Notes under the pieces: generated by a model
Told to the model about the DNA's origin: nothing
What the model saw: only the letters and a program-made list of their open reading frames with translations
Database searches by the model: none
Part shown: positions 19,268 through 55,987 of the stretch, piece by piece
How positions within the stretch are numbered: the stretch's first letter is position 1
Layout of the letters: each line of letters opens with the position of its first letter
Sequence record: NC_061446.1
Strand: one strand, 5' to 3'
Length of the DNA: 64,000 nt
Position numbers and translations under genes: made by a program

Positions 19268-20410
19268 TTACAGCGTAGATACGATAGCACGGAACACCTG
19301 ATATGCGCTCTGATAATCAGAGAAGGTACCCAGCTGCTCAAATGCAGACTTAGGCAGATCGCTAGGCGCACCAGCAGACGAATCGTACTTGGCGACAGTG
19401 AACTTGCCACGACCGCGAGCCTGTTTGATAGAGCCAGTCATTGACGCAGTCGGTCCGAACACAACACCAGTCTTGCTGCCGGTACCCATCACAAGGATGC
19501 AATCTTCATCGCCACCCATGTTAGCAACGGTAGCAGTCACGCTACGTTTCGGCGCAGGCAGTTGCATGGCTTTGAACATAGCCCTTACGTTCTCACCATC
19601 ACCACCCTTCATCAGCGCATCATACAGAAAGTCATAGCCGTTCGCGCTCGATGTGTTGCTTGTGCTAGGCATGCGAAGTTCAGCGGCAGTGCGCTCACCT
19701 TTCTTAGCAGCCGTAGCAATCTCGGCGTCAGTTGCGTCTTTGGTGGCCAGCAGTTTGATGACGTTCTTGATTGAACGCAGTTCGCCCAGATGAATCTGAA
19801 CCTTCTTGACCTTTTTGAGATGGTCACCAACGAAGGTCATCAGCCAGCCTTTCTGCTGCATGACAACAGCCACTTCCAGTTTCTTATACTGGAAAGAGAA
19901 CTGCTTGCCGGAAGCGTATAAGAACTTACCTGCTCCAGCTACAGGCTCAACAGCGCGAATGAAGTCGGGCGCATAGTCACGCGCATCGCTTCGGATCAGA
20001 CTGGAGTACGCAGGAGAAAACGTACCTACAGTAGTTACCGGGGCCTGTGGCTTCCCAGCACGAGGCTTAGCAACGACTTTGTTAGGGTCAGTTGCTTTGA
20101 TCTTGATTGCACGAAGACCGTTAATGGTAGCCACCAGCGTCCTGGCTTTATACAGGTTCTTCATGGCGGTGACAAGATTCTTGCCAGCAGCTTTCTTCGC
20201 AAGGGCGGTAGTCGCCGCTGCGTCGTTCAGCAGGTCAAGGACAGCGGACAGCTTCGCAGTGTCCAGCTCTTTGATTTTAACCAGCTCGTCAATCTTCTTA
20301 ACGATAAGTTTTGCGTTCTTACCGAAAAGGATTTCAGCGTTGGCGATCTGCGTTTTGTTCGCAGCAGAGACCGACACAACAGTGCCGGACGGGAGAGTGA
20401 TTTCGTGCAT
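19268..20410 (-). CDS. Lys/Ala-rich hypothetical protein with N-terminal VSVSA
   Basis: 380-aa ORF with AAGGA RBS and a downstream terminator. Confidence 0.75.
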   Translation of the reverse strand: MHEITLPSGTVVSVSAANKTQIANAEILFGKNAKLIVKKIDELVKIKELDTAKLSAVLDLLNDAAATTALAKKAAGKNLVTAMKNLYKARTLVATINGLRAIKIKATDPNKVVAKPRAGKPQAPVTTVGTFSPAYSSLIRSDARDYAPDFIRAVEPVAGAGKFLYASGKQFSFQYKKLEVAVVMQQKGWLMTFVGDHLKKVKKVQIHLGELRSIKNVIKLLATKDATDAEIATAAKKGERTAAELRMPSTSNTSSANGYDFLYDALMKGGDGENVRAMFKAMQLPAPKRSVTATVANMGGDEDCILVMGTGSKTGVVFGPTASMTGSIKQARGRGKFTVAKYDSSAGAPSDLPKSAFEQLGTFSDYQSAYQVFRAIVSTL

Positions 20411-20419
20411 TGCTGTTCC

Positions 20420-20986
20420 TTAACGTTTCTTGTTGGTCCAGTTGTTCTGCTTAACAGGCGCAGGTGAGGTGTTCTCTTCCGTGATTTCGTCGTCGGCGTC
20501 TTCTTCCTCGTCCTCGACGTCATCTACTTCCGGCTCAGGTTCAGGCTGCGGTTCAGCCTGTTTGACAGGAGTAGTCTCCATCACAGACGCAGCGAGGGGT
20601 GCCTGAGACTCAGTATTTACAGTAGCAACTGGCTCTGCTTCTGCGGCCTGACGCGCTTTAGCTACTTCACCAACAGCGTGTTCGTGAATAACGTCAGTGG
20701 TAAGCAGCGCGCCCTTATCTTTCAGGATTGCATCTGCTTTCTCTTGGTCCCATTGGTCCCACAGGATATCAAGAGTCTTGTAACCGTAGTTCATGCCTTT
20801 CGGCAGCTTGCCACGACCGTTGAACGGCAGACCGTTAGAAGGAGTAGCTGGCTCGAACTCGTCCATCATCTCCCACTTACGTTTAGCCTCGATACACTTC
20901 GGGCCCCAGACGCCATCGCAGGCACCGTCGTACAGACCAAGCATGGTCATGATGATCTGTAGCTTCTGATAGAATTTGTTCAGCAT
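20420..20986 (-). CDS. Peptidoglycan-binding (PGBD-like) protein with acidic tail
   Basis: LQIIMTMLGLYDGACDGVWGPKCIEA matches the PG_binding_1 pattern; Asp/Glu-rich C-terminus. Confidence 0.7.
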   Translation of the reverse strand: MLNKFYQKLQIIMTMLGLYDGACDGVWGPKCIEAKRKWEMMDEFEPATPSNGLPFNGRGKLPKGMNYGYKTLDILWDQWDQEKADAILKDKGALLTTDVIHEHAVGEVAKARQAAEAEPVATVNTESQAPLAASVMETTPVKQAEPQPEPEPEVDDVEDEEEDADDEITEENTSPAPVKQNNWTNKKR

Positions 20987-21002
20987 AACGTGTCCTCTTA
21001 TA

Positions 21003-21031
21003 GAAGGAGGGGCCGAAGCCCCTTACCTTTT
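21003..21031 (-). terminator. Probable terminator after the SNF2 gene
   Basis: GGGGC-TTCG-GCCCC hairpin with a weak T-tract. Confidence 0.55.
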
Positions 21032-24000
21032 AGACTGATTTGTTTTTCGACATGGTCAGTTTCAACTTGTCGAGTGCGCCAGTGACCTTTTTGATGTTCG
21101 TGACGGTGTAGCCTGCTTTCACGATCTTATTGATACGTGCTTTCGCAGTTGCCGCATTCTTCACGAATCCAATCCACATTCCAGGCGCCATGTCGAACGT
21201 ACCGAACTTACGAGTGTTCGGGATTTTCGTGCCGACGAAGCGTTTCATCTGCGGGTTGGTCTTCAGGTCGAACATGATACGCAGCCTGTCTTCCATGATC
21301 ATCGGATATGCCTTGACGTGTTTCTTATCAGAGGCAGACTTGTGACGAACGAGGAAGAACTTCGGCAGTTGCTCTTGACCCTTCGTTGCCAGCTTAACGT
21401 TGAAGCCCATACGCGGAGTAGACTCGTCAAAGAAGTCCAGTACAAACTCCAGACGCTTCTCCGACATACGGTCGAATTCCAGCTTCTTCTTAACTTCGAT
21501 GAAGTCCAGCATAGCTTCAAAGTCAGCGTAGTACGCACAGTCGTAGTAAACGTAATCGCCGAACTCAACGAACTCAAAGTCCTTGAGTGCTTTCGCATCA
21601 GGGTCAGTCGCGTTCGCATACAGTGCTACAAATCCGTTGTACACGGTAGGAGTCAGCTCCAGTGCCATATCAGCACCAGTCGCTTCTGCAACAGCTTTCG
21701 CACCAGGCTTCATACGAGTCGTGGTGTTAGCCAAAGGAGGCAGGTCAGCAGTCTTACGGCGACGAACTTTCTTGGCAGCTTCTTCAACACCTTCGTTGAT
21801 TGGCTTACCAGACTCTTTGTTCGCAGCACGTTTGGCAGCACGGGCAGCTTTACGCGCCTGAGCTTCAACCTTCTTCTCTGTCTCTTTCGTATCAGCCGTC
21901 TGCGTTTCATCAGCAACGGTGTCTTCAACTTCAACACGGTTAGCTTCTGCGTTTGCACGTTTGCGATCTTTCTCATTCGCCCACGGCTTACGCTGCTCGA
22001 AGAAACGTTTCAGGTCGTTCTTGTCTACCTTAGTAGCAATGTGAACTTTGGTCGCAGGAATTGCAACGGTCTCACCAGAGCCAGCCAGACGAACACGAAC
22101 GGTACTGATAGGACTATCGCCACGCAGCTTGCCGTCAACCATACGCACAGTCACAGACACGACAACACCGTTACCGAACTCAGTCACGACAGGTGCACGA
22201 TTCAGAGAATCTTTCAGCCCTTCGCCGCTAGTGAAGTTACGGTTACGCGCCCAATCCAACAGACGCTCAGTGCCCCAGCCATTACGATCAGGGATCTTCT
22301 GGTTAGCAACAAGCGGAGTCTGCTCCATCACGCGGAAGTCAGTCAGAGCCGGAGTAGCTGGCAGAGCCTGCATTGCTGCAACCGTTGTACGGCGCATCTC
22401 CTGGAACTCTTGAGACTCGATTTCGTTCAGGTCACGCTTCGCAAGGAAGTAGTCACCGAAGTCTTCCATCGTGTTGTTATCAATCAGCAGCTTCGCACTC
22501 ATTTTGATCGGGTCGAGCTTGTACTGGTCAAGTGCTTCGTAACGCTGGTTGCCTTTCTCGTCGAAGCGAGTCTTCTCCAGAGTCTTCCACATCAGACGTG
22601 CGACCTTACCAACTTCCAAGGTCTTGTTCGTCATAACCCAGTCGATGAACACAACTTCACGAGCCATGTCACCCGGCTTACCGTTCTCGTCCAACTTCGC
22701 AGCAGCAACGTCAGGACGGAAGATACGCGCAGTAGACTGGTCGTAAGTACCTGGTGACCACGGAGTATCGCAGCGGATGATGCGGCTACCCATCTGCATG
22801 TTGTGGCCTTCGGAGATTGCCTGCTCGTTCGCAATCAGAATCTGGACGTTGTTGTCAGTTTTGAATGCGTCGAGGTTAGCGTCTTTGTTCTGACCCAGCT
22901 TACCAACTTCACCGTGATACACCACAGCAACTTTCTTATAGTTGGCTGGCAGTGCGTTGTAGATGGCGTTTGCTGCACGAACGTAACGCGTAAAGACAAT
23001 CAGCTTGCCCTGAACTTCCGGCTTCCAGTAGTCCGGATCGTCCGGAGGCGGAACCATTGAAGGCGGCAGCGCTTGACGCTTGAACTCTTCGGACTGCTTA
23101 CGTGCCAGATACTTCTGACCGTTGTAGACAGCAATGTCCAGCTCACGCGGCTCTACGCCTGGCTTCCATTCGAAGATCTGTTGCTCACCGATCATGCGGT
23201 CGCGTTCTGGCTGCACTTCGAAGTGCTTACGAATACGGTCGATAATGGTCAGCACTTTCGCAGAAACGAAGTTGGTAACGCCAGCGGCTTCAAACGTCAT
23301 ACGAGCAACGTCATCACCCATCGGGTCAGTCAGCATCATTTCCATACGCTGGAAGTACATGTTCAGGTCAGCGTTGCTTGCCAGCAGTGCGCCTAAATCA
23401 TCACCCTCTTCGATCTCGTCTTCGTCAATATCAGAAGCGGTATCGCCATCACCACCACCAGCTTCGTCGTCATCGTCGTCACTGTTACCTGCTTTCTTCT
23501 TAGCAGACTTGGCCGCTTCGTCCAGCTTCTCCAGAACTTCCGCGTACATTGCGTTGTACACTTCCTGGTGAAGCGCAGAGTTAGGCACTGACGGATCATC
23601 GATCTCAACCTGGATGAAGGTATCAATCGGGTTCGGCAGCATGAACGCCCAATGCTTACGCTTGAACGAGATGAACGCCGTATGGTTAGCCATACGTGAG
23701 TGCGCACGACGAATCATTTCGATATCGTCTTTCGCGCCATCATACGCAACGTCCAGTGAATCACCGAACATAGCAGGCGTCATCAGTGCGGCCTGACCAA
23801 CGATATCACGCACACGGTCAGTTACCAGCGTACCAGTAGCGATACGAGCATAGCGGACGGACGGAGCAGTGAAGACCGCTTTGGTATTGAAGTGAACCTG
23901 AGAGCCAGCCTGACCGCCAGAGAAGTTCTTCACTTTGTGGGACTCGTCGAGCAACACATAGCTGAACTTGAAGCGGTTAACGAACTCAACAGCACCACGC

Positions 24001-26879
24001 ACACGAACACGAACACCGCCGATATCAACGTTGAACGTACCAGTTTGCAGATAGCTCAGGCCGACGATGAAGATTGTGTTACGAGGTGACTGAGAGATCA
24101 CATCGTACATGCGTTCTTCGCCCCACGTGTTCACGGTGTCAGCAGTGATAGGCACTGCGTTCCAGCCGTCAACGATTTTGTGGAGGTCGTCACACCAGTT
24201 CGCTACGAGGTTAGACGGACAGATGATCAGAGGACGAATCCCTTCTTCACCCAAATCGTCTAGCTCTTTGATGGTGGCCGCAATATCAGTCAGACCGATG
24301 ATTGTCTTACCACCGCCAGGCGCGATAAAGATTGTTGCAAAGCGCGGACGACGACGCAGAGTTTTGTGCGCTTCGACCTGATGCGGCAGCAACGCTGCAC
24401 CGTCTTTCAGACCCGGGATGCGGATATCATCAATGGTGATACCGCTATCAGGTTTCAGGCGTTCGATCTCAGTCTCAGCCGATTCGAAAATCTCAAGAGA
24501 CTTAGGAATCACATCGCTGTACATCGTAGCGAATGGCAGAATGATCTGTTGCAGACGACCTGAGCCTGGAGCCTGTTCGCTTTCAATCAGAGAACTAAAC
24601 AGCTTCTTGCGATCAGCACGTACAAGCGACTGCGCCATTTCACGGTACAACGCACCACCGAAGTAGTTGTTGAGGCGTGCCATGTCAGACAGCTTGGACT
24701 TCTCACCCATTACAAAGTAGTGAGTGTGCGACGGCAGTGATTCGGTAGCAGCCTGAATGCTTCCCATCTCGCTCATGGAAGTTGCAATCAGGTTAGAACC
24801 ACGCAGGCCAGCAGCATCGTTCAGCACACGAATCATGATACGCAGCATCGTCAGAGCAGGGCGCTCGTTAGACAGGTCTGGTACCGAGAAATCGTTAGCG
24901 ATCAGATTCTCATAGAGGTCTTTGTCCATCGGGCTTTCAGACAGAGCCGCATCTTCTGCGTCCATGCCGATTGCTTTACGTGCATTCTCCACCAGCGTTT
25001 TCAGGTCAGGAACTTGTTTGTTCTTGAGCATGAACTCGTAGGTCTGGCAGGTCTGCGCGATGATGTTCAGTAGCTCAGGCAGGTTAGAACCTTCGGTGGA
25101 ATTGTATTTGATCGTGGACTCACTCACACTCTCAACCAACTTACCGCTACCGGACTCAACTTTGGCAGCTTCAATCAGCGTGTCATATGACGGACGGAAC
25201 AGAGCCATACCACCAGATGCCTGATTGTGATAGATGTTACCAATCACGTTCGCAGCAGAACGGAAGTTAGGCGCTTCACCCGGCTCCGCAAAGTCGTAGC
25301 CGAGAGCATCAGCAACGTCCAGCGAGTTAGGTGACTTCATGCCGACAGTACGGGTTTCGTTAACTGCCAGACCGCCGCCGTTCGAGGTGTTCACGATCAG
25401 AGAGAAGTCAGGGTCGATACCGATGCACACGTCACTGAAACGAGACAGTGATTTGGCTTTCGTCTGCACATCACGGTCGAAGTCCAGATTACCGTTCTGG
25501 ATAGCGAACATGTTTGTACGCAGCGTGTCGTGCTCAGTAGACAGCGGCACACCTTTTTCGAACAGGTCTTCGAGGACGCCGTTGAGCGTGGTTTCGTAGG
25601 TCTTAACCATCTCAATGTCAATGTCTTCACGACGAGGTAATACGGCCATCGTACCGTTAGGCATGATAGTCATACCGTGTTCATCAGCAACCACGTCGTT
25701 AACCACATAGCCGAATTTCTCACGCAGCTTTTTCAGCTCAGGCAGAGAAGTGGCAGAAGTTACATAACGCGGAATACGAGCAGCACGGGTGATACCAGTA
25801 CGAGTAGAACCAGCAACACGGAAGTAGTAGCTCGCCCAACCCTGGAACCAACGATACAGACACATGGTCTGAGTGTCGGCACCCTGAGAGATATACTCCA
25901 CCAGCTCTTTTTCGAAGTTAACAATCAGGCCGCCTTCGACACGAATGTCGGTTGCCAGTGCTACTTCGTTGAAATCGACAGGCGTATCGTGACTGATCTT
26001 CATCGCTTGCAGCTTGCGATCAATCATCTGTTTGCCTGGGATAGAGCGAATGCCGATTGTCATGAAATCGCCCAGACCATCAACTACGGATTTTTCCAAG
26101 TTGCGGAACAGGTCAATATCAATGCCGTTCATCGACGGGTGAATAGAACGCAAAGCAGCGTTATACACAGACCAGTCTTTGTCAAGCGGGATACGAATCA
26201 TCTTCGTATCGAATGCGTTGGCGTTAGTACGCTCAGTGCCGAAGATATCCTTGTAGATAGTCTTTGCCACACGAATTGCAGACTGCGCAATATCGGAGCT
26301 GTAGGTACGCAGGTTGGCGCTTTCGAAGTTCGCGTCGTTATCAACACGAGGACGGTCGCTACCCTGATTGTTCAGAACGTTGAAGTTACCGTTCGAAGCC
26401 AGCGGGCTGGTGGGGCACGGAGTACCAGACATGATAATGTCTTTGCCGCCAGGGAAGCGCGTACTGTTTTCGATGATAGCGCCAGAAGATGCAGACAGGT
26501 GCTCGGCCAGAGCAGTCTTAATCTCACGACTCAGCTTGTCGCCGTTCAACATCATGTTGATTTTCAGCGAGGACGCTTCGACGTTGTTCTTGATACGCTT
26601 AACGAAATCATCCGGAGAGACTTCCAGCATATCTTCGAACTCTGCACCGTTAGTAACGATGTAGTTAATCAGGTCGAAGGCCGCGTAGATGCGAGCTACG
26701 GTAGAAGCGGTGAATACTGCCAGTGCTTCATAGTTACGACGGGACTTCCCTGTCGCGTACATCTTCGACGTCTTGGCGTCGAATTCGGGCGGCAAGGGCT
26801 TGATAGCAAGTGCCTGATTAAACGTATCGGCAATTTGCTGGGTAGCCGTTGCTGACGTACTAATCATCTGATTCATCAT
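21030..26879 (-). CDS. Giant SNF2-family helicase/ATPase (1949 aa)
   Basis: LLPHQVEA, APGGGKT, ICPSNLVANW, LDESHKVKN, ATGT, KLIVFT, EGHNMQ and PWSPGTYDQSTARIFR motifs; about 800 aa of unassigned N-terminus. Confidence 0.9.
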   Translation of the reverse strand: MMNQMISTSATATQQIADTFNQALAIKPLPPEFDAKTSKMYATGKSRRNYEALAVFTASTVARIYAAFDLINYIVTNGAEFEDMLEVSPDDFVKRIKNNVEASSLKINMMLNGDKLSREIKTALAEHLSASSGAIIENSTRFPGGKDIIMSGTPCPTSPLASNGNFNVLNNQGSDRPRVDNDANFESANLRTYSSDIAQSAIRVAKTIYKDIFGTERTNANAFDTKMIRIPLDKDWSVYNAALRSIHPSMNGIDIDLFRNLEKSVVDGLGDFMTIGIRSIPGKQMIDRKLQAMKISHDTPVDFNEVALATDIRVEGGLIVNFEKELVEYISQGADTQTMCLYRWFQGWASYYFRVAGSTRTGITRAARIPRYVTSATSLPELKKLREKFGYVVNDVVADEHGMTIMPNGTMAVLPRREDIDIEMVKTYETTLNGVLEDLFEKGVPLSTEHDTLRTNMFAIQNGNLDFDRDVQTKAKSLSRFSDVCIGIDPDFSLIVNTSNGGGLAVNETRTVGMKSPNSLDVADALGYDFAEPGEAPNFRSAANVIGNIYHNQASGGMALFRPSYDTLIEAAKVESGSGKLVESVSESTIKYNSTEGSNLPELLNIIAQTCQTYEFMLKNKQVPDLKTLVENARKAIGMDAEDAALSESPMDKDLYENLIANDFSVPDLSNERPALTMLRIMIRVLNDAAGLRGSNLIATSMSEMGSIQAATESLPSHTHYFVMGEKSKLSDMARLNNYFGGALYREMAQSLVRADRKKLFSSLIESEQAPGSGRLQQIILPFATMYSDVIPKSLEIFESAETEIERLKPDSGITIDDIRIPGLKDGAALLPHQVEAHKTLRRRPRFATIFIAPGGGKTIIGLTDIAATIKELDDLGEEGIRPLIICPSNLVANWCDDLHKIVDGWNAVPITADTVNTWGEERMYDVISQSPRNTIFIVGLSYLQTGTFNVDIGGVRVRVRGAVEFVNRFKFSYVLLDESHKVKNFSGGQAGSQVHFNTKAVFTAPSVRYARIATGTLVTDRVRDIVGQAALMTPAMFGDSLDVAYDGAKDDIEMIRRAHSRMANHTAFISFKRKHWAFMLPNPIDTFIQVEIDDPSVPNSALHQEVYNAMYAEVLEKLDEAAKSAKKKAGNSDDDDDEAGGGDGDTASDIDEDEIEEGDDLGALLASNADLNMYFQRMEMMLTDPMGDDVARMTFEAAGVTNFVSAKVLTIIDRIRKHFEVQPERDRMIGEQQIFEWKPGVEPRELDIAVYNGQKYLARKQSEEFKRQALPPSMVPPPDDPDYWKPEVQGKLIVFTRYVRAANAIYNALPANYKKVAVVYHGEVGKLGQNKDANLDAFKTDNNVQILIANEQAISEGHNMQMGSRIIRCDTPWSPGTYDQSTARIFRPDVAAAKLDENGKPGDMAREVVFIDWVMTNKTLEVGKVARLMWKTLEKTRFDEKGNQRYEALDQYKLDPIKMSAKLLIDNNTMEDFGDYFLAKRDLNEIESQEFQEMRRTTVAAMQALPATPALTDFRVMEQTPLVANQKIPDRNGWGTERLLDWARNRNFTSGEGLKDSLNRAPVVTEFGNGVVVSVTVRMVDGKLRGDSPISTVRVRLAGSGETVAIPATKVHIATKVDKNDLKRFFEQRKPWANEKDRKRANAEANRVEVEDTVADETQTADTKETEKKVEAQARKAARAAKRAANKESGKPINEGVEEAAKKVRRRKTADLPPLANTTTRMKPGAKAVAEATGADMALELTPTVYNGFVALYANATDPDAKALKDFEFVEFGDYVYYDCAYYADFEAMLDFIEVKKKLEFDRMSEKRLEFVLDFFDESTPRMGFNVKLATKGQEQLPKFFLVRHKSASDKKHVKAYPMIMEDRLRIMFDLKTNPQMKRFVGTKIPNTRKFGTFDMAPGMWIGFVKNAATAKARINKIVKAGYTVTNIKKVTGALDKLKLTMSKNKSV

Positions 26880-27370
26880 TCACCCAGTTTGGTATAGTTG
26901 TCAATCATAGACTGCCACACGCTCGGTACGGGCAAGCGACGGTCTGCGGCGATATCCGATAGCACAACGGCTAATGCGTAAGCACGAAGAGGACTAAGCC
27001 CTTCGAACTTGTCGCGCGTAAACACAGACGTGAGTTGTTCGTTGGTCAGTGTCTGATACTGCGCACGATACTCGGACAGATACGTGCCGTACTTACCGTC
27101 ATCAACCGGCATGGTATCAGGGATGCTCTGAATAGACAACAATGCTTTCGCAAGAGCGTCCATAATCAAAAGCAGATCAGCCTGATCATACGGTGTGATA
27201 TCTGGCACGTTTGAACGACCCAGCAGTTCGATGACTGACTGCGGAAGTTGAATAGGCTCTCGCGTTTGAGAGATGGACTTCATGATTCCTTCGGCAGCAC
27301 CAGCATACAGCTTACCGCTATCTGCGATGCCCTTCAAAAGAGTATGAAGCCGCGAGTTTACGTCAATCAC
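26876..27370 (-). CDS. Hypothetical protein
   Basis: Start moved to GTG 27370 after AGGAG. Confidence 0.65.
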   Translation of the reverse strand: MIDVNSRLHTLLKGIADSGKLYAGAAEGIMKSISQTREPIQLPQSVIELLGRSNVPDITPYDQADLLLIMDALAKALLSIQSIPDTMPVDDGKYGTYLSEYRAQYQTLTNEQLTSVFTRDKFEGLSPLRAYALAVVLSDIAADRRLPVPSVWQSMIDNYTKLGE

Positions 27371-27380
27371 GGTTCTTCTC

Positions 27381-29442: not shown

Positions 29443-30249
29443 TTAGAAGCTGTGACCTTTGATGATAGCAGCAATCTTGCCGAAGTATTCCGGGCTGTAG
29501 CGGAACATCTTGGCATAGTAGTCCAGCAGCTTGTTAACGTCAACGCCAGCAGCGGCAGACACTGAATCAACCTGCGGGAAGTGTTTCTCGTCCAGCTCGT
29601 CGCCAGACAGAACAGCTACCATGCTCATGGAAGTGATCTGCTCTTCCTGACCCTGATCGTCAACAACGATGAAGCTGTTGTCGTCAGTTACGTTAGCGGC
29701 AACGAAGCCAACTTTCAACGCACCGGAGTTAGACACGAAGCTAACCATGTCACCACCAACAACGCTGGACAGTTCCAGATTGTGGCGAGCAACGGCCTGA
29801 GCCAGAGTAGGCATAGACGCCTGCAGGTTGACGGTAGCCGCACCAGACACAGAACGAATCATGTCGATCAGTTCAGAGTTGTCGTTCGCGTTGCTTTCGC
29901 GTACCAGAACGTCTTCACCGCTTTCGCTACGACGTACTGCCCACATGCGCTCGGACTTGTCCATGTACATGTTTTTCGACAGTGCCTGGAACTCGTCACC
30001 CATCTGCGACACAGGGATAACGTCCTGCATACGGCTGAGGATGGTACGAACGAAGCTGGTGGTTTTACCCTGCTCGATCATAGAAGACGCACCTTCAACA
30101 GGCATGTATTCACGATTGCAGGAAGCGCTTACGATGGCGCCGAAGTTGTCCGCGATGTTCTCGCCGACGTTGTGAGTTACTTGCACGATGGCCACGCTCT
30201 GAGTGTCGTTGAGCTGGTCAATCTGTTTGATGAAAGCCTTCATTGTCAT
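29443..30249 (-). CDS. Putative virion (head) structural protein
   Basis: 268 aa, AGGAG RBS, CTAATTT motif upstream, terminator downstream; internal RSVSG and DSVSA. Confidence 0.6.
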   Translation of the reverse strand: MTMKAFIKQIDQLNDTQSVAIVQVTHNVGENIADNFGAIVSASCNREYMPVEGASSMIEQGKTTSFVRTILSRMQDVIPVSQMGDEFQALSKNMYMDKSERMWAVRRSESGEDVLVRESNANDNSELIDMIRSVSGAATVNLQASMPTLAQAVARHNLELSSVVGGDMVSFVSNSGALKVGFVAANVTDDNSFIVVDDQGQEEQITSMSMVAVLSGDELDEKHFPQVDSVSAAAGVDVNKLLDYYAKMFRYSPEYFGKIAAIIKGHSF

Positions 30250-31456: not shown

Positions 31457-32563
31457 TCAGTCTGCCTTAGTGAGTCCCAGATACTCAATCAGATTGCGTA
31501 GCTGGTCGTTATACCCACCTTCGATTAGCGCTCGCGCCATTGCGACGTGGTTCGAGTTAATCGTCCGCACCACTTTAGCCTGATACTCAGGAACGTTCTG
31601 CATGTTCTGGCTCAGGTTGTAGAAGTAACTACGAACGAAGTTGGTTCGTTCCACGTTGCTCGCTTCCATATCGCTTGTGTCCTGCGTAGGAGTCAGCAGC
31701 AGGTAGAGCGCAGCAAGTAGTTCAGGACTCTGGTCAACGATAGGCGATACCAACGACGCAGCAATCTTCGTCAGTCCTTTCGCAACAAAATCAACCACAG
31801 TCTTCTCGATGAACGCTGTACCTGCTTTACCTACGTTTGGCAAATACAAGCCAGGCAGGATGTAGATGCAGAAGTAAAGCGGAAAGTCTTTGCGCATCAC
31901 GTCAGAGATAAGCATCTCCGAGTAGTCTTTCCAGATGTTAACGTTGAAGTGCCATTCATCGTAAGGCACTGTACGCATCAGGTTCGACACTGACAGGTCT
32001 TTCACTTGGTTAGCCTGCGACGCAAGATCGCGAGCACTCTGCGAAGGACCAAGGTTCGAACTTGATACCAGCTGGACGTAGTTGCGTGTAACAGCACCAA
32101 CAGTGTTGTACACAACGTTCAGCATTTCAACACCATTACCGTTCAGCGCAAAGATAACCGAACGAGGAAGACCGATAGTGATGTACTCGTTATTATTGTC
32201 AACGCCCCACAAGCGCCAGTAACGCCCGCGACCGAGTTGAGTCATCGGCTGCGGGAGAATACGGTTAGCGCGAGGTTTCAGGCAGAACGTGAAGCAGATA
32301 CCGCTGTCAATCATGATCACTGAATCATCAGGACGATTCGAATAACCCATCGACATATCGTTATCCGTCGAGTACACGTTCACCAGAGTGAAGTTCAGCG
32401 ACTTGGTGAAAGGCATCTGAGCTTCAATCAAATAGGCGAGGACTTGACGAATGATAGTATCGAGCACATAAGGAGAAGCGCTACGCATTTGTTGTGGCCG
32501 ATACTGACCACCATACGTATTCTCCTTGAATGTGCGATCTACCTTGAAATGCGTTAACGCCAT
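31457..32563 (-). CDS. Hypothetical protein
   Basis: 368-aa ORF coupled to the upstream gene (TAATG). Confidence 0.7.
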   Translation of the reverse strand: MALTHFKVDRTFKENTYGGQYRPQQMRSASPYVLDTIIRQVLAYLIEAQMPFTKSLNFTLVNVYSTDNDMSMGYSNRPDDSVIMIDSGICFTFCLKPRANRILPQPMTQLGRGRYWRLWGVDNNNEYITIGLPRSVIFALNGNGVEMLNVVYNTVGAVTRNYVQLVSSSNLGPSQSARDLASQANQVKDLSVSNLMRTVPYDEWHFNVNIWKDYSEMLISDVMRKDFPLYFCIYILPGLYLPNVGKAGTAFIEKTVVDFVAKGLTKIAASLVSPIVDQSPELLAALYLLLTPTQDTSDMEASNVERTNFVRSYFYNLSQNMQNVPEYQAKVVRTINSNHVAMARALIEGGYNDQLRNLIEYLGLTKAD

Positions 32564-33846
32564 TACTTGACCGACTGTTTCAGCAGGCGTTTCTGTTGCG
32601 GATTCAGGCCCATAACATCTGCAATCTCGTCGATCTTACGCAGAGTCAGAACGCCCTTAGCAGTACCACCAGAACCGGTCAGAGAGATCTTAACGAACTC
32701 ACGACCGTTACGGCCGCTGACCATCTGATGCACAACGCTGTTCTTACCACCACGTCCTGCACGGAGCGCAGTAGATGCCATGCCCAGGATTTCAGTAACA
32801 GCTTCTTTCTTCTCGGTCGGGCTGAGGCCAGGAACGAGACGCACATACAGGCTGTCGTTCTGGACACGCACGTTGTCGAAGATTTCTTTCTTACGACCAC
32901 GAATGGTATGCTGTTGCAGACCCAGCGTAGTGGTGTCACGCAGGTTCTGAGTAGAACGGTTGATTGGCTTACGCTCGCTGTAGTTCAGGAAGCCGTCGAG
33001 AGCCATCAGGTGGTTGATGGTACGCTTCATTTCAGGAGCAGTAGCAATCTGACGACCCATCGGGAAGCTACCCGGAACCTTCTCGTCAACGATTGACGTC
33101 AGGAAGTTTTCGCTGATGCCGTTAGCAACCGCGATCGTGGTAGACAGTACCAGAGCATAGTTCGGGTAGTGCATACCGTCAGAGTTCACGAAGTTGTCGA
33201 TGAACACGTAGGTCTGGAAGCAGATCGGGTCAGTACCGGACGCGATGAAAGTACGAGTACGAATCTTCGAATAGTCTTCTTTATTCAGAATCTTCGACAG
33301 GTAGTTGGCGATGGTAGCAGCCAGCTTAGTGTGTTCTTTCGGCGCGCCGTTTTTAACGTCGATGCTCATGAGCTTAACCAGTTTGGTCTGCTGGTCTTTC
33401 GCCTGAGTAATAACGTTGAGCAGAGACTTAGCGGCTGCGTTCTGATCTTTGAATGCGCTGAAAGTCTTGCTGTTCAGAATCTGGTAGGCAACGGACAGTT
33501 CACCAATTGCCTGAGACAGTTGGCTTACCTGCTGGTTGTATTGAGCTTTGCTCTTAACGTCAGAAATATCGATCTTAGACAGGTCGATAACTTGGTTCAG
33601 GTCAATCGCTTTTGCCTGTTTGCCTTTGATTGAGCCTTCGATATCGGAGAGTTCGATGGCCTTAGCGCTGACGGACAGGAGTTTCTGCGGGATTTTAACT
33701 GACGTGGCGTTTGCGATAACTTTATCGAGTACGTTACGGAACTCTTTCGCTGTGCGGGCACCACGTAGGGCAGTCATGTTCCCAGAGCTATAGTCAACAG
33801 ATGCGCTGATACTGCTAACTTCATTGTTTTTGGCAGTCTTAGCCAT
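32563..33846 (-). CDS. Putative virion protein with N-terminal SSISA
   Basis: About 427 aa, GAGG RBS (ATG 33852 is an alternative start), CTAATTT motif upstream. Confidence 0.65.
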   Translation of the reverse strand: MAKTAKNNEVSSISASVDYSSGNMTALRGARTAKEFRNVLDKVIANATSVKIPQKLLSVSAKAIELSDIEGSIKGKQAKAIDLNQVIDLSKIDISDVKSKAQYNQQVSQLSQAIGELSVAYQILNSKTFSAFKDQNAAAKSLLNVITQAKDQQTKLVKLMSIDVKNGAPKEHTKLAATIANYLSKILNKEDYSKIRTRTFIASGTDPICFQTYVFIDNFVNSDGMHYPNYALVLSTTIAVANGISENFLTSIVDEKVPGSFPMGRQIATAPEMKRTINHLMALDGFLNYSERKPINRSTQNLRDTTTLGLQQHTIRGRKKEIFDNVRVQNDSLYVRLVPGLSPTEKKEAVTEILGMASTALRAGRGGKNSVVHQMVSGRNGREFVKISLTGSGGTAKGVLTLRKIDEIADVMGLNPQQKRLLKQSVK

Positions 33847-40197: not shown

Positions 40198-40535
40198 TAG
40201 CGCAGACGAGCGAGAGCCTGTTTAGCTTTTGCCAGAGTCTGTTCGTAGTTCGCTTCGTCGTCGAACTCAGGCTCCATGCGGATCTCGATGCCAGAGATAT
40301 TGAAGCCGACATCTTCGTCTTCATCTTTGGTCACCATACCGAAACGCGCAACGCCGTTTTTGTAGCTGATGAAACGGAAGTCGAGAATATCTTCCGGACC
40401 ACCCAGGTCAGACGGCATACCGTCGTCCAGCAGATCGAAGAACTCTTTCTTCGTCAGTTTGCTGAACACGGCATTGATAGCAGAGGCAGATTCGGACTTA
40501 ACAGCTTCTTCCAGATTCAGTTTGATAAGGGACAT
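40197..40535 (-). CDS. Acidic hypothetical protein with N-terminal KSESA
   Basis: 112-aa ORF with GGAG RBS. Confidence 0.7.
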   Translation of the reverse strand: MSLIKLNLEEAVKSESASAINAVFSKLTKKEFFDLLDDGMPSDLGGPEDILDFRFISYKNGVARFGMVTKDEDEDVGFNISGIEIRMEPEFDDEANYEQTLAKAKQALARLR

Positions 40536-46293: not shown

Positions 46294-46743
46294 TTAGTAG
46301 CGTCTTGGTTTCTTTGGCTTCTTAATCTTGGTGGACTTAGGACGCTTGATACGCTGCAAGGCCTTACGTGCCTCAGCAATCTGACCAGACAGAGTAGCGC
46401 GTTGTTTCTTCACGGCATCTGTATCTTGGTCAGTGCCTTTCAGTTTATCAAGGCGGTTCCACTCTTTGACCAAACGATCAACGACAGCAGCACGACTAAC
46501 ACGTTGCTGGTTGGTACGCACAATATCCTGCTGCGTCTTTACCGAGCGTTGCGCTTCTAATACTTTGGCACGTCCTGACTCAATGCCTTTCGTATCACCG
46601 TCAGACTGTTTTTCGTTGAGCGTCTTACGTGCGACGGTTGCTCTGCGTTGTGCTCCTTTCAGATCATCACGCGAGTTCTCTAAACTGACTTTCGTTTCTT
46701 CAAGTGGGCTGGTACGCGCACTCAAGCTAATGAGGATTTTCAT
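46294..46743 (-). CDS. Basic coiled-coil protein with N-terminal MKILISLSA
   Basis: 149 aa, GGAG RBS, Lys-rich tail. Confidence 0.7.
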   Translation of the reverse strand: MKILISLSARTSPLEETKVSLENSRDDLKGAQRRATVARKTLNEKQSDGDTKGIESGRAKVLEAQRSVKTQQDIVRTNQQRVSRAAVVDRLVKEWNRLDKLKGTDQDTDAVKKQRATLSGQIAEARKALQRIKRPKSTKIKKPKKPRRY

Positions 46744-46759
46744 AACGGCTCCAGAAATG

Positions 46760-46786
46760 AAAAAGGGCAGCCGAAGCCACCCTTTT
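46760..46786 (-). terminator. Intrinsic terminator (conserved type)
   Basis: GGGTGGC-TTCG-GCTGCCC plus TTTTT. Confidence 0.75.
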
Positions 46787-46874
46787 GTAGAATGGCGCGC
46801 TATGCACCCGACTGTTAAGTCTACTACGGTTATTTTACCTCGCAGTAGTCAGCGAGGAGATTGGGATCACCTCC

Positions 46875-47411
46875 TCATGCTGATTGAAGATCGACAACTT
46901 CCTCGTCTTCTATATCAGCGGCAGACCACGAACGAAGCACGGACGCATTGCCGCGATTGCCTGTCAGCATAGTACGCACTGCTGGTTTGGCATCGCGCTC
47001 TGCATAGTAGTTGCTAAGAGCGTTCTCATTAGCGAACCACAAAATGGAGTGACCACCTTTCGGGCAGATCAGGAATTGTGCTGGACGCTGCGGAACGTTC
47101 AACGTCATATAAAAATCACCAGCACCAGTAGGACCCATCATAGGCATGGGTTTCATGATCTGCATAAAATCGTTGGCATCTTTAAGGCGAGTATCGCCTA
47201 ACAGCCAGAGAGCACCTTCTTCACCTTCACGCACGGCAGACAATGTGCCTTTGCGAGTAGTGATTGAACCGAATACATCCTGATCAAATCGAGCCAGACC
47301 AAAGATAAGCGATGCGAGTTTCTTCAAATCAGGAGTGGTGCATGGGCTATCAATTTTCGCCATGCCCTCAGACCCAACTGTAATCTTCGAGAGTGATACA
47401 AAGATTTCCAT
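46875..47411 (-). CDS. Hypothetical protein with N-terminal MEIFVSLS
   Basis: 178 aa with an ATAATTT motif upstream. Confidence 0.7.
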   Translation of the reverse strand: MEIFVSLSKITVGSEGMAKIDSPCTTPDLKKLASLIFGLARFDQDVFGSITTRKGTLSAVREGEEGALWLLGDTRLKDANDFMQIMKPMPMMGPTGAGDFYMTLNVPQRPAQFLICPKGGHSILWFANENALSNYYAERDAKPAVRTMLTGNRGNASVLRSWSAADIEDEEVVDLQSA

Positions 47412-49572: not shown

Positions 49573-49579
49573 CTGTTAC

Positions 49580-49586: not shown

Positions 49587-49614
49587 AAACATCCTGCAAT
49601 AAATCAGACAATTC

Positions 49615-50546: not shown

Positions 50547-50549
50547 AAT

Positions 50550-52096: not shown

Positions 52097-52104
52097 AACG
52101 GCCT

Positions 52105-52623: not shown

Positions 52624-52630
52624 TGTAACC

Positions 52631-52825: not shown

Positions 52826-52835
52826 GCGTTATTCC

Positions 52836-54952: not shown

Positions 54953-54976
54953 TTCTTTTCTTCGTTTTCTTCTTGT

Positions 54977-54985
54977 TGTTTACAG
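54977..54985 (-). promoter_or_regulatory. Class 1 variant CTGTAAACA
   Basis: Upstream of the Pol-like gene. Confidence 0.5.
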
Positions 54986-55120
54986 AAACCTCTTGCTTTG
55001 CAAGGCGATACAAGGCAGGTAGAAGAACAAGCAACGCTGGGCGATCGAGCGGCGCGCTCAAGGCACGGGATATACGGATATACATGAGGGCTTTAGGCGC
55101 ACTCCGTTTTTGAGCCACCA

Positions 55121-55327
55121 AAAAGGAAGAACCACACCCTCATACGTTAAAACCCATGTCCTATACGCTTAAACATATACCCAGGAGCGATCACAATTTT
55201 CAAAAAGATCTACCCGAAACCATGTAAATTTTTTTCAAATTTGGAGAGATTTCTGTCCATTTTTCACCCAATGGGTCAAAAACAGAGGAAAAACCCGAAT
55301 AAAATCAAGGACTTTTCCTCTTCTGCA
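55121..55327. other. AT-rich non-coding tract (possible origin or promoter region)
   Basis: Hand count 65/180 G+C (36%) over 55141-55320; A/T tracts; imperfect repeats ATACGTTAAAAC / ATACGCTTAAAC. Confidence 0.4.
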
Positions 55328-55987
55328 CTACTTTTTCTGAGAAACGCGTTTACCGAGCTTCACTCCGATCTGCGTCAGAATGCGTTTAACAGTCTCTCCG
55401 TCATGCTCTTCCATAGCAGCGGCTAAGCGTTCGCCCTGTTCGCGCGATAGCTCAGGCATAACCATTTTAAGCATCTGCGAACGTAGTTTTGCGCTCTTGG
55501 ATTTGCCTTTCGAGACAGACACGCCCTCATTCGCCTTAAGCGCACTGCTAATCGCTTTCTGCACACGACGATCACCAAAAATGTCGCCGAATATGTCACC
55601 GAACAGGTCCTTGAACGACAATCCGCCGCCCATAATGTCGTCTTTCGTGAAACGAACAGGTACACCCAGCGCATTAGTCTTCGCGCAGTGCGTACTTTCA
55701 ACCTGATTTGTTGTGCGTCCACCAGCACGGAAGTTCTCGTCAGGACGTGATGCCTTGCCCTCTGCGCCCGGCTTAGTGTTGCCGTTGCGCAAATCTGGAT
55801 CGCCTTCAACCTGTTTGTTTTGATCAAACATATCGTCGGCAGTTTCGCTTTGATTTGGGTCGAACGGGATCTTACCTGTCAGCTTGTTTGGATCTGGCCA
55901 GCTATCAGGAATATCAGACGCAGGCTGTGCCTTGTTCGTCATATCACCGTTTGCTTCACCACTCAAACTGATCTTAATACGAGTCAT
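55328..55987 (-). CDS. Hypothetical protein with N-terminal IKISLSG
   Basis: 219 aa, AGGAG RBS. Confidence 0.7.
   Translation of the reverse strand: MTRIKISLSGEANGDMTNKAQPASDIPDSWPDPNKLTGKIPFDPNQSETADDMFDQNKQVEGDPDLRNGNTKPGAEGKASRPDENFRAGGRTTNQVESTHCAKTNALGVPVRFTKDDIMGGGLSFKDLFGDIFGDIFGDRRVQKAISSALKANEGVSVSKGKSKSAKLRSQMLKMVMPELSREQGERLAAAMEEHDGETVKRILTQIGVKLGKRVSQKK

What the first reader, a model, noticed from the sequence alone, without database searches (positions are those of the whole stretch)
19268..55987. Shared N-terminal S-x-S-(A/G/R/K) peptide on about 10 unrelated proteins: candidate capsid-targeting/maturation code
Seen, group A: MQIFVSLSA (38451), MQIYVSLSR (40197), MKILISLSA (46743), MEIFVSLSK (47411), MTRIKISLSG (55987). 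Group B: MALIKINVGQTVASESA (39585), MSLIKLNLEEAVKSESA (40535). Group C: MMNQMISTSA (SNF2, 26879), MHEITLPSGTVVSVSA (20410), MAKTAKNNEVSSISA (33846). Internal copies also occur: LSVSA, KSESS, RSVSG, DSVSA. The sequences after the motif are unrelated (ART-like, Lys-rich, acidic, helicase), so this is not gene duplication. Several of these genes follow the class 2 motif, and none of the identified replication enzymes starts with it. Established: T4 internal proteins share a short N-terminal capsid-targeting sequence removed by the prohead protease, and phiKZ-like proteases cut a short consensus. Inference: this phage tags injected cargo with a new SxS signal, probably cut by its prohead protease.
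Basis: partly seen in the sequence, partly recalled or inferred. Interest (0 to 1): 0.85.

Follow-up and report, generated by a model that had tools for sequence, protein, structure and literature searches.

The report
N-terminal S-x-S tag on phage proteins
A jumbo Erwinia phage puts the same short N-terminal peptide, ending in Ser-x-Ser, on many unrelated proteins, and comparative evidence suggests it is a new address-and-cut label that loads cargo into the capsid, like the capsid targeting sequence of phage T4 but with a different code.

Summary
The window is Erwinia jumbo phage pEa_SNUABM_30 (Alexandravirus). All ten N-termini are present as described.

The core signal is stronger than reported:
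- Nine proteins genome-wide start M-x-[IVL]-x-[VI]-S-[LI]-S. Codons differ, and similarity stops after the tag.
- Hydrophobic-x-S-x-S ends within the first 20 residues in 24 proteins, against 7.3±2.7 expected.
- The tags are conserved in distant relatives (Yoloswag, JA29, fHe-Yen9-02, PaBG, a marine contig).

The same S-x-S unit recurs elsewhere:
- It is found, position-conserved with a variable middle residue, in head-assembly proteins: the acidic scaffold-like protein (14 sites vs 2.4), the N-terminal regions of the major capsid protein and portal, and the N-terminus of the prohead protease across about 40 homologues.
- S-x-S pairs are conserved 43% vs 15% expected. Other X-x-X pairs are not.

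Homologues of the tagged ADP-ribosyltransferase-fold protein gp188 in T4-like phages carry a T4-type capsid targeting sequence at the same position. In PaBG, the orthologue of the tagged 217-kDa helicase and a protein carrying the longer tag are virion proteins.

Best reading: a capsid-targeting propeptide cut after S-x-S by a T4 gp21-like protease. Cleavage and packaging are inferred, not shown. This is a new variant of a known kind.

The parts
37942..38451 (-). gp188, 169 aa, ADP-ribosyltransferase-fold cargo. Class A tag MQIFVSLS is at nt 38428-38451 (TTG start).
   Evidence: The tag was verified. The AlphaFold model has pLDDT 92, with only residues 1-7 below 50 and the fold starting at residue 12. 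Six of 32 family members hit Pfam ART-PolyVal. Fold hits are ART-fold proteins. Homologues carry either S-x-S tags or T4-type capsid targeting sequences.
39595..40197 (-). gp190, 200 aa. Class A tag MQIYVSLS is at nt 40174-40197. There is also an internal site TVKSES|S at residues 101-106.
   Evidence: The tag is conserved in Yoloswag (MEKVVSLSA), JA29 (MEILVSISA) and fHe-Yen9-02 (MRISISLSA). The internal site is conserved in JA29 as SLS-SPPP.
46294..46743 (-). gp200, 149 aa, basic coiled-coil-like protein. Class A tag MKILISLS is at nt 46720-46743.
   Evidence: Orthologues start MEILISLSQ, MQVLISLSK and MEIVISLSM.
46875..47411 (-). gp201, 178 aa. Class A tag MEIFVSLS is at nt 47388-47411. A TAATTT promoter-like motif lies 43 nt upstream.
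   Evidence: Orthologues start MQIVFSLSK (JA29) and MRIFVSMSG (fHe-Yen9-02). The Yoloswag orthologue lacks the tag and starts MSGLIVKNK, about where the mature end is predicted.
55328..55987 (-). gp212, 219 aa. Tag MTRIKISLS is at nt 55961-55987.
   Evidence: The Yoloswag orthologue starts MKLKINLSES and the fHe-Yen9-02 orthologue MKISISLN. The tag is only partly conserved.
38455..39585 (-). gp189, 376 aa, Lys/Ala-rich. Class B (long) tag MALIKINVGQTVASES is at nt 39538-39585.
   Evidence: Orthologues have ..LVSESA..IQSTSA and ..VISESA. The PaBG virion protein gp83 starts MLIKINLLEAV and is also Lys-rich, but BLASTP finds no homology between them.
40197..40535 (-). gp191, 112 aa, acidic. Class B tag MSLIKLNLEEAVKSES is at nt 40488-40535.
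   Evidence: The fHe-Yen9-02 orthologue starts MTAIKLNLGKNVKSESS.
19268..20410 (-). gp171, 380 aa. Class B-like tag MHEITLPSGTVVSVS is at nt 20366-20410.
   Evidence: Orthologues start MPLINLNLNTGVASTSA, MTTISLKVDSVSA and MSILKFKETISSESA, so S-x-S-A is conserved in all.
21030..26876 (-). gp173, 1948 aa, SNF2-type helicase (217 kDa). Tag MNQMISTS is at nt 26853-26876.
   Evidence: Orthologues start MLISTSK, MQIFSTSA and MLISTSK. The PaBG orthologue gp202 (30% identity over 1968 aa; N-terminus MGSLFTLNSLSAA) is band 1 of the virion gel at 221 kDa.
32563..33846 (-). gp181, 427 aa. Tag MAKTAKNNEVSSIS is at nt 33805-33846, with a second site KLLSVS|A at residues 56-60. A TAATTT motif lies 45 nt upstream.
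   Evidence: Both sites are conserved in three distant phages (SIS/SIS/SAS/STS, and SVS/SLS/SLS/SVS).
26876..27370 (-). gp174, 164 aa. Candidate propeptide of about 34 residues ending MKSIS|Q (nt 27269-27283).
   Evidence: The site is conserved as SIS/SIS/SVS/SLS in four phages. The PaBG orthologue gp201 has IDSLS|R at the same place.
29443..30243 (-). gp178, 266 aa, next to the head-tail connector gene.
   Evidence: All six sites are position-conserved in four phages with a variable middle residue. A TAATTT motif lies 36 nt upstream.

Best explanation
Hydrophobic-x-S-x-S is the recognition and cleavage motif of the prohead maturation protease of this phage group. That protease is gp140, which lies outside the window at record 108021-108800 and is T4 gp21-like.

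Two kinds of short N-terminal propeptide end in the motif:
- class A, 8 residues: M-x-[IVL]-x-[VI]-S-[LI]-S
- class B, 14-17 residues: M-x-L-I-K-[IL]-N-...-[VI]-x-S-x-S

They act like the T4 capsid targeting sequence. They dock otherwise unrelated proteins onto the scaffolding core while the prohead assembles, and are cut off during maturation. This leaves the cargo inside the head with the DNA, probably for delivery into the next host. The cargo includes an ART-fold enzyme, a Nudix hydrolase, a 217-kDa SNF2 helicase, basic Lys-rich proteins and several proteins of unknown function.

Shown here:
- The tags exist and exceed chance.
- They are conserved as peptides, not as DNA.
- They are modular and lie outside the predicted folds.
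- The S-x-S unit is under selection and concentrated in head-assembly proteins.
- Homologous cargo in T4-like phages carries T4-type targeting sequences.
- Two relatives of tagged proteins are virion proteins in PaBG.

Inferred:
- That cleavage occurs, and that it falls after the second Ser.
- That gp140 is the enzyme.
- That the tag is what targets the protein.
- That the cargo is ejected into the host.
For: 1. The tags are real. Nine proteins carry the strict octapeptide, [VI]SLS is almost absent elsewhere, and the codons differ. Phi-x-S-x-S ends within the first 20 residues in 24 proteins, against 7.3±2.7 expected, or 10.7±3.1 when N-terminal composition is kept.

2. The tags are conserved in orthologues of 31-70% identity in Yoloswag, JA29 and fHe-Yen9-02. 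They also occur in a TARA marine contig that carries the same protease family.

3. The motif marks head proteins.
- The scaffold-like acidic protein has 14 S.S[AGST] sites against 2.4 expected (0 of 500 shuffles reach it). The same holds in Yoloswag and JA29, and the sites align with a variable middle residue.
- The portal has 6 against 1.05.
- The major capsid protein has LSES|T and, in the variable linker, HSHS|G / HSES|S / VSES|H near residue 68. PaBG's capsid protein loses about 20% on maturation.
- The protease N-terminus has Phi-x-S-x-S-F conserved down to about 40% identity and is disordered in the model.
- gp178 has six conserved sites.

4. S-x-S pairs are conserved in both Yoloswag and JA29 in 29 of 68 cases (43%), against 15% expected from single-Ser conservation. 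T, A, D, E and K pairs match expectation.

5. The gp188 family shows the tag is modular. The domain starts at residue 12. Lineage-specific N-termini are either the S-x-S type (MQIQLSLSG, MRIIISLSG, MKLILSMSA) or the T4 type (MKTFKQFITEK and similar). The T4-type members sit in T4-like contigs, within a 7-gene locus that shares that targeting sequence. Contigs L023 and L025 each have three adjacent genes with S-x-S tags.

6. PaBG virion proteins include the helicase orthologue and gp83, which starts MLIKINLLEAV.

7. The best PDB fold match of the protease model is T4 gp21. His124 and Ser181 are invariant.

8. Tagged genes gp146, gp181, gp201 and gp243, and the gp193-gp188 operon, follow the TAATTT motif that also precedes structural genes. 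None of the 18 genes behind the CTGTAAATA motif is tagged.
Against: - No mass spectrometry, N-terminal sequencing or genetics exists for any phage of this group that shows cleavage at S-x-S or tag-dependent packaging.
- The PaBG list is a 14-band gel. None of the class A proteins' orthologues is on it.
- Lu11 lacks the motif in its scaffold, capsid-protein linker and protease, so the code is not universal in the protease family.
- The fold match to T4 gp21 is weak (E 0.07, TM 0.45).
- A T4-like L/I-x-E site (LIQE|A, about residue 84) in the capsid protein would fit the '20%' figure equally well.
- Two other peptidase-like genes could be the enzyme instead: gp139 (HExxH, KMPT-N) and gp207.
- 'MSLIK' also starts tail-fibre-like proteins (gp101, gp106), so class B may partly reflect something else.
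- PaBG gp83 shows no BLASTP similarity to gp189.
Confidence: 0.62

Rival explanations
1. The tag is a docking or assembly peptide, or a propeptide, but the responsible enzyme or the fate differs. Either it is not cleaved at all (a beta-strand that binds a common partner), or it is cut by another phage peptidase: gp139 (HExxH metallopeptidase next to the protease gene) or gp207.
For: The alternating hydrophobic pattern M-x-I-x-V-S-L-S looks like an amphipathic strand (direct reading of the sequences). gp139 has a KMPT-N domain plus HELAH, and the tagged gp146 has the same domain straight after its tag. gp207 is annotated as a peptidase and is conserved.
Against: The S-x-S-F site at the N-terminus of gp140 itself, conserved across the family, points to autoprocessing by gp140. 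The many sites in the scaffold-like protein fit cleavage into small peptides better than docking. The position-equivalent T4-type sequence is a cleaved propeptide.
Confidence: 0.17
2. S-x-S is a sequon for a post-translational modification, not a protease site. Candidates are O-glycosylation by the glycosyltransferase encoded in the head module (gp143), or phosphorylation.
For: A glycosyltransferase gene sits three genes from the protease and is syntenic in Yoloswag, JA29, Lu11 and metagenomic relatives. Many sites lie in acidic surroundings (DFDSESS).
Against: The motif is concentrated in internal or transient proteins (scaffold, protease, propeptide regions) and at the extreme N-termini of enzymes. 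It is not enriched in the exposed decoration protein or the mature capsid-protein body. This explanation does not account for the hydrophobic prefix, nor for the swap with T4-type targeting sequences on homologous cargo. Lu11 keeps the glycosyltransferase but lacks the motif.
Confidence: 0.06
3. The tag controls something unrelated to the capsid, such as a degron, a localisation signal, or a binding site for a host or phage factor during infection.
For: Several tagged genes (gp224, gp234, gp117) lie among non-structural genes, and no promoter of the structural type was seen directly upstream of them.
Against: The same unit occurs in capsid, portal, scaffold and protease proteins. The helicase orthologue is in virions. 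Homologous cargo in T4-like phages carries the capsid targeting sequence.
Confidence: 0.08
4. It is chance, compositional bias, or faded paralogy of one ancestral gene.
For: Group C alone is within chance. One look-alike site (gp180) is not conserved.
Against: Shuffle controls reject chance. The tags are conserved in orthologues of 31-70% identity. The tagged proteins have different folds and families: Nudix, ART fold, SNF2 helicase. The tag also appears on and off within a single family.
Confidence: 0.02

Closest known systems
Capsid targeting sequence (CTS) of phage T4 internal proteins (IPI, IPII, IPIII, Alt), removed by prohead protease gp21
   Same: A short N-terminal propeptide of about 10 residues is shared by otherwise unrelated proteins. 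It ends in the same short motif at which the protease cuts the major head proteins. The cargo includes ADP-ribosyltransferases and basic DNA-associated proteins, and the tag is modular and lineage-specific (PMC9026906, PMC3012670, PMC5694885). The gp188 family carries either tag type at the same position.
   Different: The sequence is unrelated. The putative P1 and P3 residues are Ser, whereas T4 has Glu at P1 and Leu/Ile at P3. There is a second, longer tag class. The phage group is different (Alexandravirus and relatives, capsid protein only distantly related). Nothing has been shown experimentally.
Propeptide processing in phiKZ, 201phi2-1 and SPN3US giant phages (S/A/G-X-E or A-X-E motif)
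   Same: Jumbo myoviruses in which many head and ejection proteins, the portal, the capsid protein and the protease itself are cut at one tripeptide motif. Multiple sites fall within the propeptides (PMC5694885).
   Different: Those proteases cut after Glu. Here [SAG].E is depleted in the scaffold-like protein (12 observed vs 20.7 expected). Most of their propeptides are longer than 100 residues and are not shared between proteins, whereas here they are 8-17 residues and shared.
ART-PolyVal domains of phage polyvalent proteins (Pfam PF18760)
   Same: gp188 belongs to a family whose members hit this Pfam model. The family occurs as a domain in giant proteins of 2,000-5,000 residues and sits next to ART-PolyVal genes. 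Arg15 and Glu147 are invariant, and fold matches are ART-fold proteins.
   Different: gp188 itself does not reach the Pfam threshold. Here it is a stand-alone 169-residue protein with an S-x-S tag. Activity and target are unknown.

Membership tests
T4-type capsid targeting sequence / internal protein system | Short (10-20 residue) N-terminal peptide shared by proteins with unrelated bodies | tested here: met
   Nine proteins carry the octapeptide, and there are further class B tags. BLASTP similarity is limited to the N-terminus.
T4-type capsid targeting sequence / internal protein system | The tag ends in the same cleavage motif that marks the major head proteins (capsid protein, scaffold, protease) | tested here: met
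   S-x-S is enriched and position-conserved in the scaffold-like protein, the capsid protein's N-terminal region, the portal and the protease N-terminus. This is a sequence pattern only; no cleavage was observed.
T4-type capsid targeting sequence / internal protein system | Cleavage C-terminal to Glu in L/I-x-E, with the T4-like tag sequence (aromatic residues at 4 and 7, L/I at 8, E at 10) | tested here: not met
   The tags here have Ser at the corresponding positions. T4-type tags are seen only on homologues in T4-like contigs.
T4-type capsid targeting sequence / internal protein system | The tag is necessary and sufficient for packaging, and is removed in the mature virion | not testable with these tools
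   This needs virion proteomics and reporter fusions. The only indirect support is the PaBG virion list.
T4-type capsid targeting sequence / internal protein system | Prohead protease of the T4 gp21 / herpesvirus assemblin fold with a His/Ser catalytic pair | tested here: inconclusive
   The model has pLDDT 86.9. The top PDB hit is T4 gp21 (5jbl), but it is weak (E 0.07, probability 0.66, TM 0.45). His124 and Ser181 are invariant. PHROG annotates it as head maturation protease.
phiKZ/SPN3US-type head protein processing | Cleavage motif S/A/G-X-E (or A-X-E) in head proteins | tested here: not met
   [SAG].E is under-represented in the scaffold-like protein of all five phages examined.
ART-PolyVal (PF18760), for gp188 | Match to the family model and conserved catalytic Arg and Glu | tested here: inconclusive
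   gp188 alone has no Pfam hit. Six of 32 aligned homologues hit PF18760 (best E 4.6e-9). R15 and E147 are invariant. Fold hits are ART-fold proteins at weak E-values.

The most novel reading that the evidence does not exclude
A whole clade of jumbo phages uses a capsid-loading code that has not been described before. The clade includes Alexandravirus, Yoloswagvirus, Salmondvirus, fHe-Yen9-02, partly Baikalvirus PaBG, and marine relatives. The code is hydrophobic-x-Ser-x-Ser at the end of an 8- or roughly 15-residue N-terminal peptide, read by a gp21-like protease that has switched its P1 preference from Glu to Ser. With this code the packaged and ejected protein set can be read from sequence alone: at least 15 proteins, including a 217-kDa SNF2 helicase, an ART-fold enzyme and a Nudix hydrolase. 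The same cargo families exchange tags when they move between phage lineages.
Probability: 0.55. Interest if true: 0.72.

Novelty: new variant of a known kind. Interest (0 to 1): 0.66.

Why it matters
If the code holds, four things follow.

1. It gives a sequence rule for predicting which proteins of a poorly studied jumbo-phage clade are packaged and probably delivered into the host. Candidates include counter-defence and host-takeover enzymes.
2. It shows that capsid-targeting tags are interchangeable address labels that co-vary with the head protease. The same ART-type cargo carries a T4-type or an S-x-S-type tag depending on the phage lineage.
3. It documents a new specificity in the gp21/assemblin-type protease family.
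4. It offers an 8-residue tag for loading foreign proteins into large capsids, as was done with the T4 sequence.

It also corrects annotations. The record's 'ATPase' is an acidic scaffold-like protein, and the 71-residue 'DNA ligase' is a small Zn-ribbon protein with two S-x-S sites.

Tried and rejected
- **DNA-level element at gene starts** (promoter, recombination cassette): rejected, because the codons differ between tags.
- **Hidden paralogy:** BLASTP among the ten proteins finds only the N-termini. Pfam and PHROGs give no shared family.
- **phiKZ-type S/A/G-X-E motif:** depleted, not enriched.
- **Sequence search of the protease and gp188 against PDB chains:** nothing useful.
- **Word-based homology search for gp188:** close relatives only. 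The exhaustive HMMER search was needed.
- **Proteomics literature** for Alexandravirus, AD1, Yoloswag, Y3 and fHe-Yen9-02: none found in the library. Only the 14-band PaBG gel exists.
- **BLASTP of PaBG gp83, gp84 and the gp202 N-terminus against the proteome:** no hits. Full-length gp202 does match gp173.
- **tblastn of the T4-type homologue P0091 against the phage collection:** only the Erwinia/Dickeya phages. Its origin was settled through metagenome contigs instead.
- **First structure job:** It was rerun with P0010.
- **gp180 RSASP and the gp186/gp193 MQY[LI]SSF N-termini:** considered and rejected as members, because they are not conserved as S-x-S.


Full report
**Identity of the window.** The window is identical to Erwinia phage pEa_SNUABM_30 (NC_061446.1, 259,771 bp, genus Alexandravirus), record positions 124001-188000. 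The phage belongs to the jumbo-phage group that also holds Dickeya phages AD1 and JA29, Erwinia phages Alexandra, Y3 and Yoloswag, and Pseudomonas phages PaBG and Lu11 (PMC7412058). I fetched the rest of the genome in pieces and used the 330 RefSeq coding sequences as the proteome.

**The observation.**
- All ten N-terminal peptides are present at the stated coordinates. gp188 starts with TTG.
- RefSeq starts the helicase one codon later (MNQMISTSA). That places S-T-S at residues 6-8, as in group A.
- BLASTP among the proteins finds similarity only in the first 8-19 residues.
- The serine and leucine codons differ between genes. Selection therefore acts on the peptide, not on DNA.

**More members genome-wide.**
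- gp224 (MEIYVSLSQ), gp234 (MEIYVSLSH) and gp243 (MEIYVSLSK).
- The Nudix hydrolase gp117 (MMINVSLSA). Its Nudix domain begins at residue 22.
- Looser members: gp146, gp130, gp118 and gp244.

**Statistics.**
- [VI]SLS occupies residues 5-9 of nine proteins and occurs only four times in 78,412 internal positions.
- In the window alone the count is 10 of 70, against 1.8±1.2.
- The better description is hydrophobic-x-S-x-S. This ends within the first 20 residues in 24 proteins, against 7.3±2.7.
- The residue after the second serine is not constrained.

**Conservation in relatives.** I fetched the syntenic regions of Yoloswag, JA29 and Yersinia phage fHe-Yen9-02. Their gp201 orthologues are only 34-42% identical to the window's.
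- Tags are conserved at the N-termini of the orthologues of gp171, gp173, gp181, gp189, gp190, gp191, gp200, gp201 and gp224. The middle residue varies.
- Examples for the helicase: MNQMISTSA, MLISTSK, MQIFSTSA and MLISTSK, and in PaBG MGSLFTLNSLSAA.
- A similar site in gp180 is not conserved and is probably chance.
- The Yoloswag orthologue of gp201 has no tag and begins about where the tag ends in the others. This is a natural demonstration that the tag is a separable module.

**The same unit in head-assembly proteins.** All of these lie outside the window.
- The 671-residue acidic protein between the decoration-like protein and the protease is annotated 'ATPase' but looks like a scaffold or core protein. 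It has 14 S.S[AGST] sites against 2.4 expected (0 of 500 shuffles). Yoloswag has 16 against 3.2, JA29 13 against 3.4 and PaBG 6 against 1.6. Lu11 has none.
- In the alignment these sites coincide while the middle residue changes (SQS/SES/SLS).
- The portal has IRSES|S and FVSQS|A near its N-terminus, and 6 sites against 1.05 overall.
- The major capsid protein has a conserved LSES|T. In an otherwise variable linker it has HSHS|G, HSES|S and VSES|H around residue 68. That would remove about 19% of the protein. PaBG's capsid protein is reported to lose about 20%.
- The prohead protease gp140 starts MDQSIRSES|F. Among 45 homologues down to about 40% identity the pattern hydrophobic-x-S-x-S-F is the consensus, although the preceding length varies from 2 to 30 residues.
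- gp178, beside the head-tail connector gene, has six internal sites, all conserved in four phages.
- A formal test over 17 orthologue families: both serines of S-x-S are kept in Yoloswag and JA29 in 29 of 68 cases (43%), against 15% expected from single-serine conservation. T, A, D, E, K and other pairs behave as expected. The middle residue of conserved S-x-S is identical in only 48% of cases.
- The phiKZ-type [SAG]-x-E motif is depleted in the scaffold-like protein.

**The protease.**
- PHROGs calls gp140 a head maturation protease.
- The AlphaFold model of the 93%-identical Alexandra protein has pLDDT 86.9. Residues 1-17, which hold the S-x-S-F site, are below 50.
- Its best PDB fold match is T4 gp21. 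The match is an order of magnitude better than the next hit but weak in absolute terms (E 0.07, TM 0.45).
- His124 and Ser181 are invariant.
- gp139, next to it, carries a KMPT-N domain and an HExxH motif. It is an alternative candidate enzyme.

**The gp188 family as a natural swap experiment.**
- An exhaustive HMMER search found 83 relatives of gp188. Some are stand-alone proteins of about 165 residues. Others are domains inside proteins of 2,000-5,000 residues.
- Six of 32 aligned members hit Pfam ART-PolyVal. Arg15 (YRG) and Glu147 are invariant.
- The gp188 model (pLDDT 92.1) matches ART-fold proteins: an anti-CRISPR, RES and ParT toxins of toxin-antitoxin systems, and tankyrases.
- Only residues 1-7 of the model are disordered, and the fold starts at residue 12.
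- In the alignment the conserved domain is preceded by lineage-specific N-termini of two kinds. The first is the S-x-S type (MQIQLSLSG, MRIIISLSG, MKLILSMSA).
- The second is a type with aromatic residues at positions 4 and 7, Leu/Ile at 8 and Glu at 10 (MKTFKQFITEK, MKSFSQFINEK, MITFSQFISEK, MNNFKQFLIEK).
- The second kind lies in T4-like contigs that carry Gp23, Portal_T4, gp19, gp15, gp53, gp5 and gp6 family genes.
- In contig L020 seven neighbouring genes with unrelated bodies, one of them an ART-PolyVal, share that 10-residue N-terminus.
- This is the arrangement described for T4 internal proteins. There, residues 4 and 7 of the capsid targeting sequence matter for targeting, and residues 8 and 10 for processing (PMC9026906; PMC3012670).
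- In S-x-S-type contigs L023 and L025, three neighbouring genes each share an S-x-S tag: an ART-PolyVal, the gp188 homologue and a third gene.
- The same cargo families thus carry the tag that fits the phage lineage they sit in.
- A marine contig with a protease 44% identical to gp140 has MKIDLLSVSG, MLVSLSR..LVSESA..LVSASG and ..LESLSA N-termini next to its head genes.

**Virion evidence.** The only proteomic data in the group is a 14-band gel of PaBG (PMC7412058).
- Band 1 is gp202 (221 kDa). It is 30% identical over 1,968 residues to the tagged helicase gp173.
- Band 9 is gp83. It starts MLIKINLLEAV, like class B, and is Lys-rich like gp189. BLASTP does not link the two proteins.
- Band 8 is a very basic protein placed like window gp182.
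- The authors note proteolytic processing of several virion proteins but give no sites.

**Expression context.**
- A motif [CAT]TAATTT[CTA][ATC] lies 30-74 nt upstream of 15 genes. These include the decoration-like and scaffold-like genes, tail genes and the endolysin. They also include the tagged gp146, gp181, gp201 and gp243, and gp193, which heads the gp193-gp188 operon.
- A different motif, CTGTAAA[TC]A, precedes 18 mostly replication-type genes. None of them is tagged.
- That the first motif is the late promoter is an inference from the genes it precedes.

**Interpretation.** The most economical reading is that hydrophobic-x-S-x-S is the cleavage motif of the prohead protease, and that the shared N-terminal peptides are capsid-targeting propeptides, functionally equivalent to the T4 sequence.
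- What makes this a variant rather than a member: the sequence, the serines in place of Leu/Ile and Glu, two tag lengths, and the phage clade.
- All previously characterised proteases of this kind in T4, phiKZ, 201phi2-1 and SPN3US cut after glutamate (PMC5694885).
- What remains inference: that cleavage happens and where exactly it falls, which enzyme does it, that the tag is sufficient for packaging, and that the cargo is ejected.

**Weak points.**
- There is no direct proteomics.
- The motif is absent in Lu11.
- The structural match to gp21 is weak.
- A Glu site in the capsid protein fits the 20% figure equally well.
- Other peptidases exist in the genome.
- Class B overlaps with the N-termini of tail-fibre-like proteins.

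**Rivals.** Docking without cleavage or cleavage by another enzyme; a modification sequon linked to the head-module glycosyltransferase; a non-capsid signal; and chance. Each is listed with its tests.

**Verdict.** The finding is a new variant of a known kind of system. It deserves a virion N-terminome and a simple co-expression cleavage assay.

Noticed in passing
window 47454 (upstream of gp201), 33891 (gp181), 30279 (gp178), about 42043 (gp193), about 41143 (gp192), about 57136 (gp213); others outside the window: A promoter-like motif [CAT]TAATTT[CTA][ATC] lies 30-74 nt upstream of 15 genes, mostly structural or tagged. Only 25 copies exist in the whole genome on both strands. It is probably the late promoter read with the phage sigma factor gp235.
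   Followed up: partly
window, upstream of gp170, gp176, gp183, gp184, gp199, gp203, gp211, gp216, gp220; others outside the window: A second motif, CTGTAAA[TC]A, lies 8-110 nt upstream of 18 genes, mostly for replication, recombination or regulation (SbcD, primase, sigma factor, SSB, ligase). None of these genes carries the tag.
   Followed up: partly
window 46744-46790 (upstream of gp200) and many intergenic sites, e.g. upstream of gp170 and gp177: A GC-rich hairpin (GGGTGGCTTCGGCTGCCC-like) is followed by TTTTCRTTTCTGGAG immediately before start codons. This looks like a terminator fused to a conserved leader or ribosome-binding region, and it is repeated across the genome.
   Followed up: no
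record 106897-108021 (gp139) and 114134-116020 (gp146), outside the window: Two proteins carry the Pfam KMPT-N domain. gp139 also has an HELAH zinc-peptidase motif and sits between the scaffold-like gene and the prohead protease. gp146 has the domain directly after an MVLSVSA tag.
   Followed up: partly
record 104805-106820, outside the window: The gene annotated 'ATPase' has no ATPase signature. It is a very acidic, Cys-pair-containing protein with long D/E runs and 14 S-x-S sites, placed like a scaffold or core protein. Tool outputs mask its label (gp138) as 'xxxxx'.
   Followed up: partly
record 5367-5582, outside the window: The 71-residue protein between terminase and portal is annotated 'DNA ligase'. 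It is a small CxxC...CxxC protein with VKSES|G and SVES|T sites, so the annotation is probably spurious.
   Followed up: no
window 36869-37720 (gp186) and 41146-41988 (gp193): Two paralogue-like proteins of about 280 residues start MQYLSSF / MQYISSF (orthologues MQFVTNF, MQFISTA). This is a shared N-terminus that does not fit the S-x-S rule.
   Followed up: partly
L026 4414-6656 (metagenome contig with a protease 43% identical to gp140): Three adjacent genes start M-x-x-IRI-[YH]-x-DGTFE-[AT]. This may be another tag class in a distant relative. Together with Lu11's lack of S-x-S, it hints that the code has changed more than once within the protease family.
   Followed up: no
L020 10001-13538 (T4-like metagenome contig): An internal-protein-like locus of seven genes shares an M-K-[TS]-F-K-Q-F-I-x-E N-terminus. 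It includes an ART-PolyVal gene and a gp188 homologue. gp188-family genes sit next to ART-PolyVal genes in three unrelated contigs, which suggests a functional pair.
   Followed up: partly
L027 14500-14970 (TARA marine contig): A DarA_C-domain protein (the family of phage P1's packaged anti-restriction protein) starts MLVSLCAEDK, a near-tag, and lies within the head gene block.
   Followed up: no
window 34024-34701 (gp182): A very basic Lys/Ala-rich protein follows the TAATTT motif. It lies next to SbcD, as does PaBG gp191, which is an abundant virion protein. It has no S-x-S tag, so basic internal proteins may enter the head by another route.
   Followed up: no
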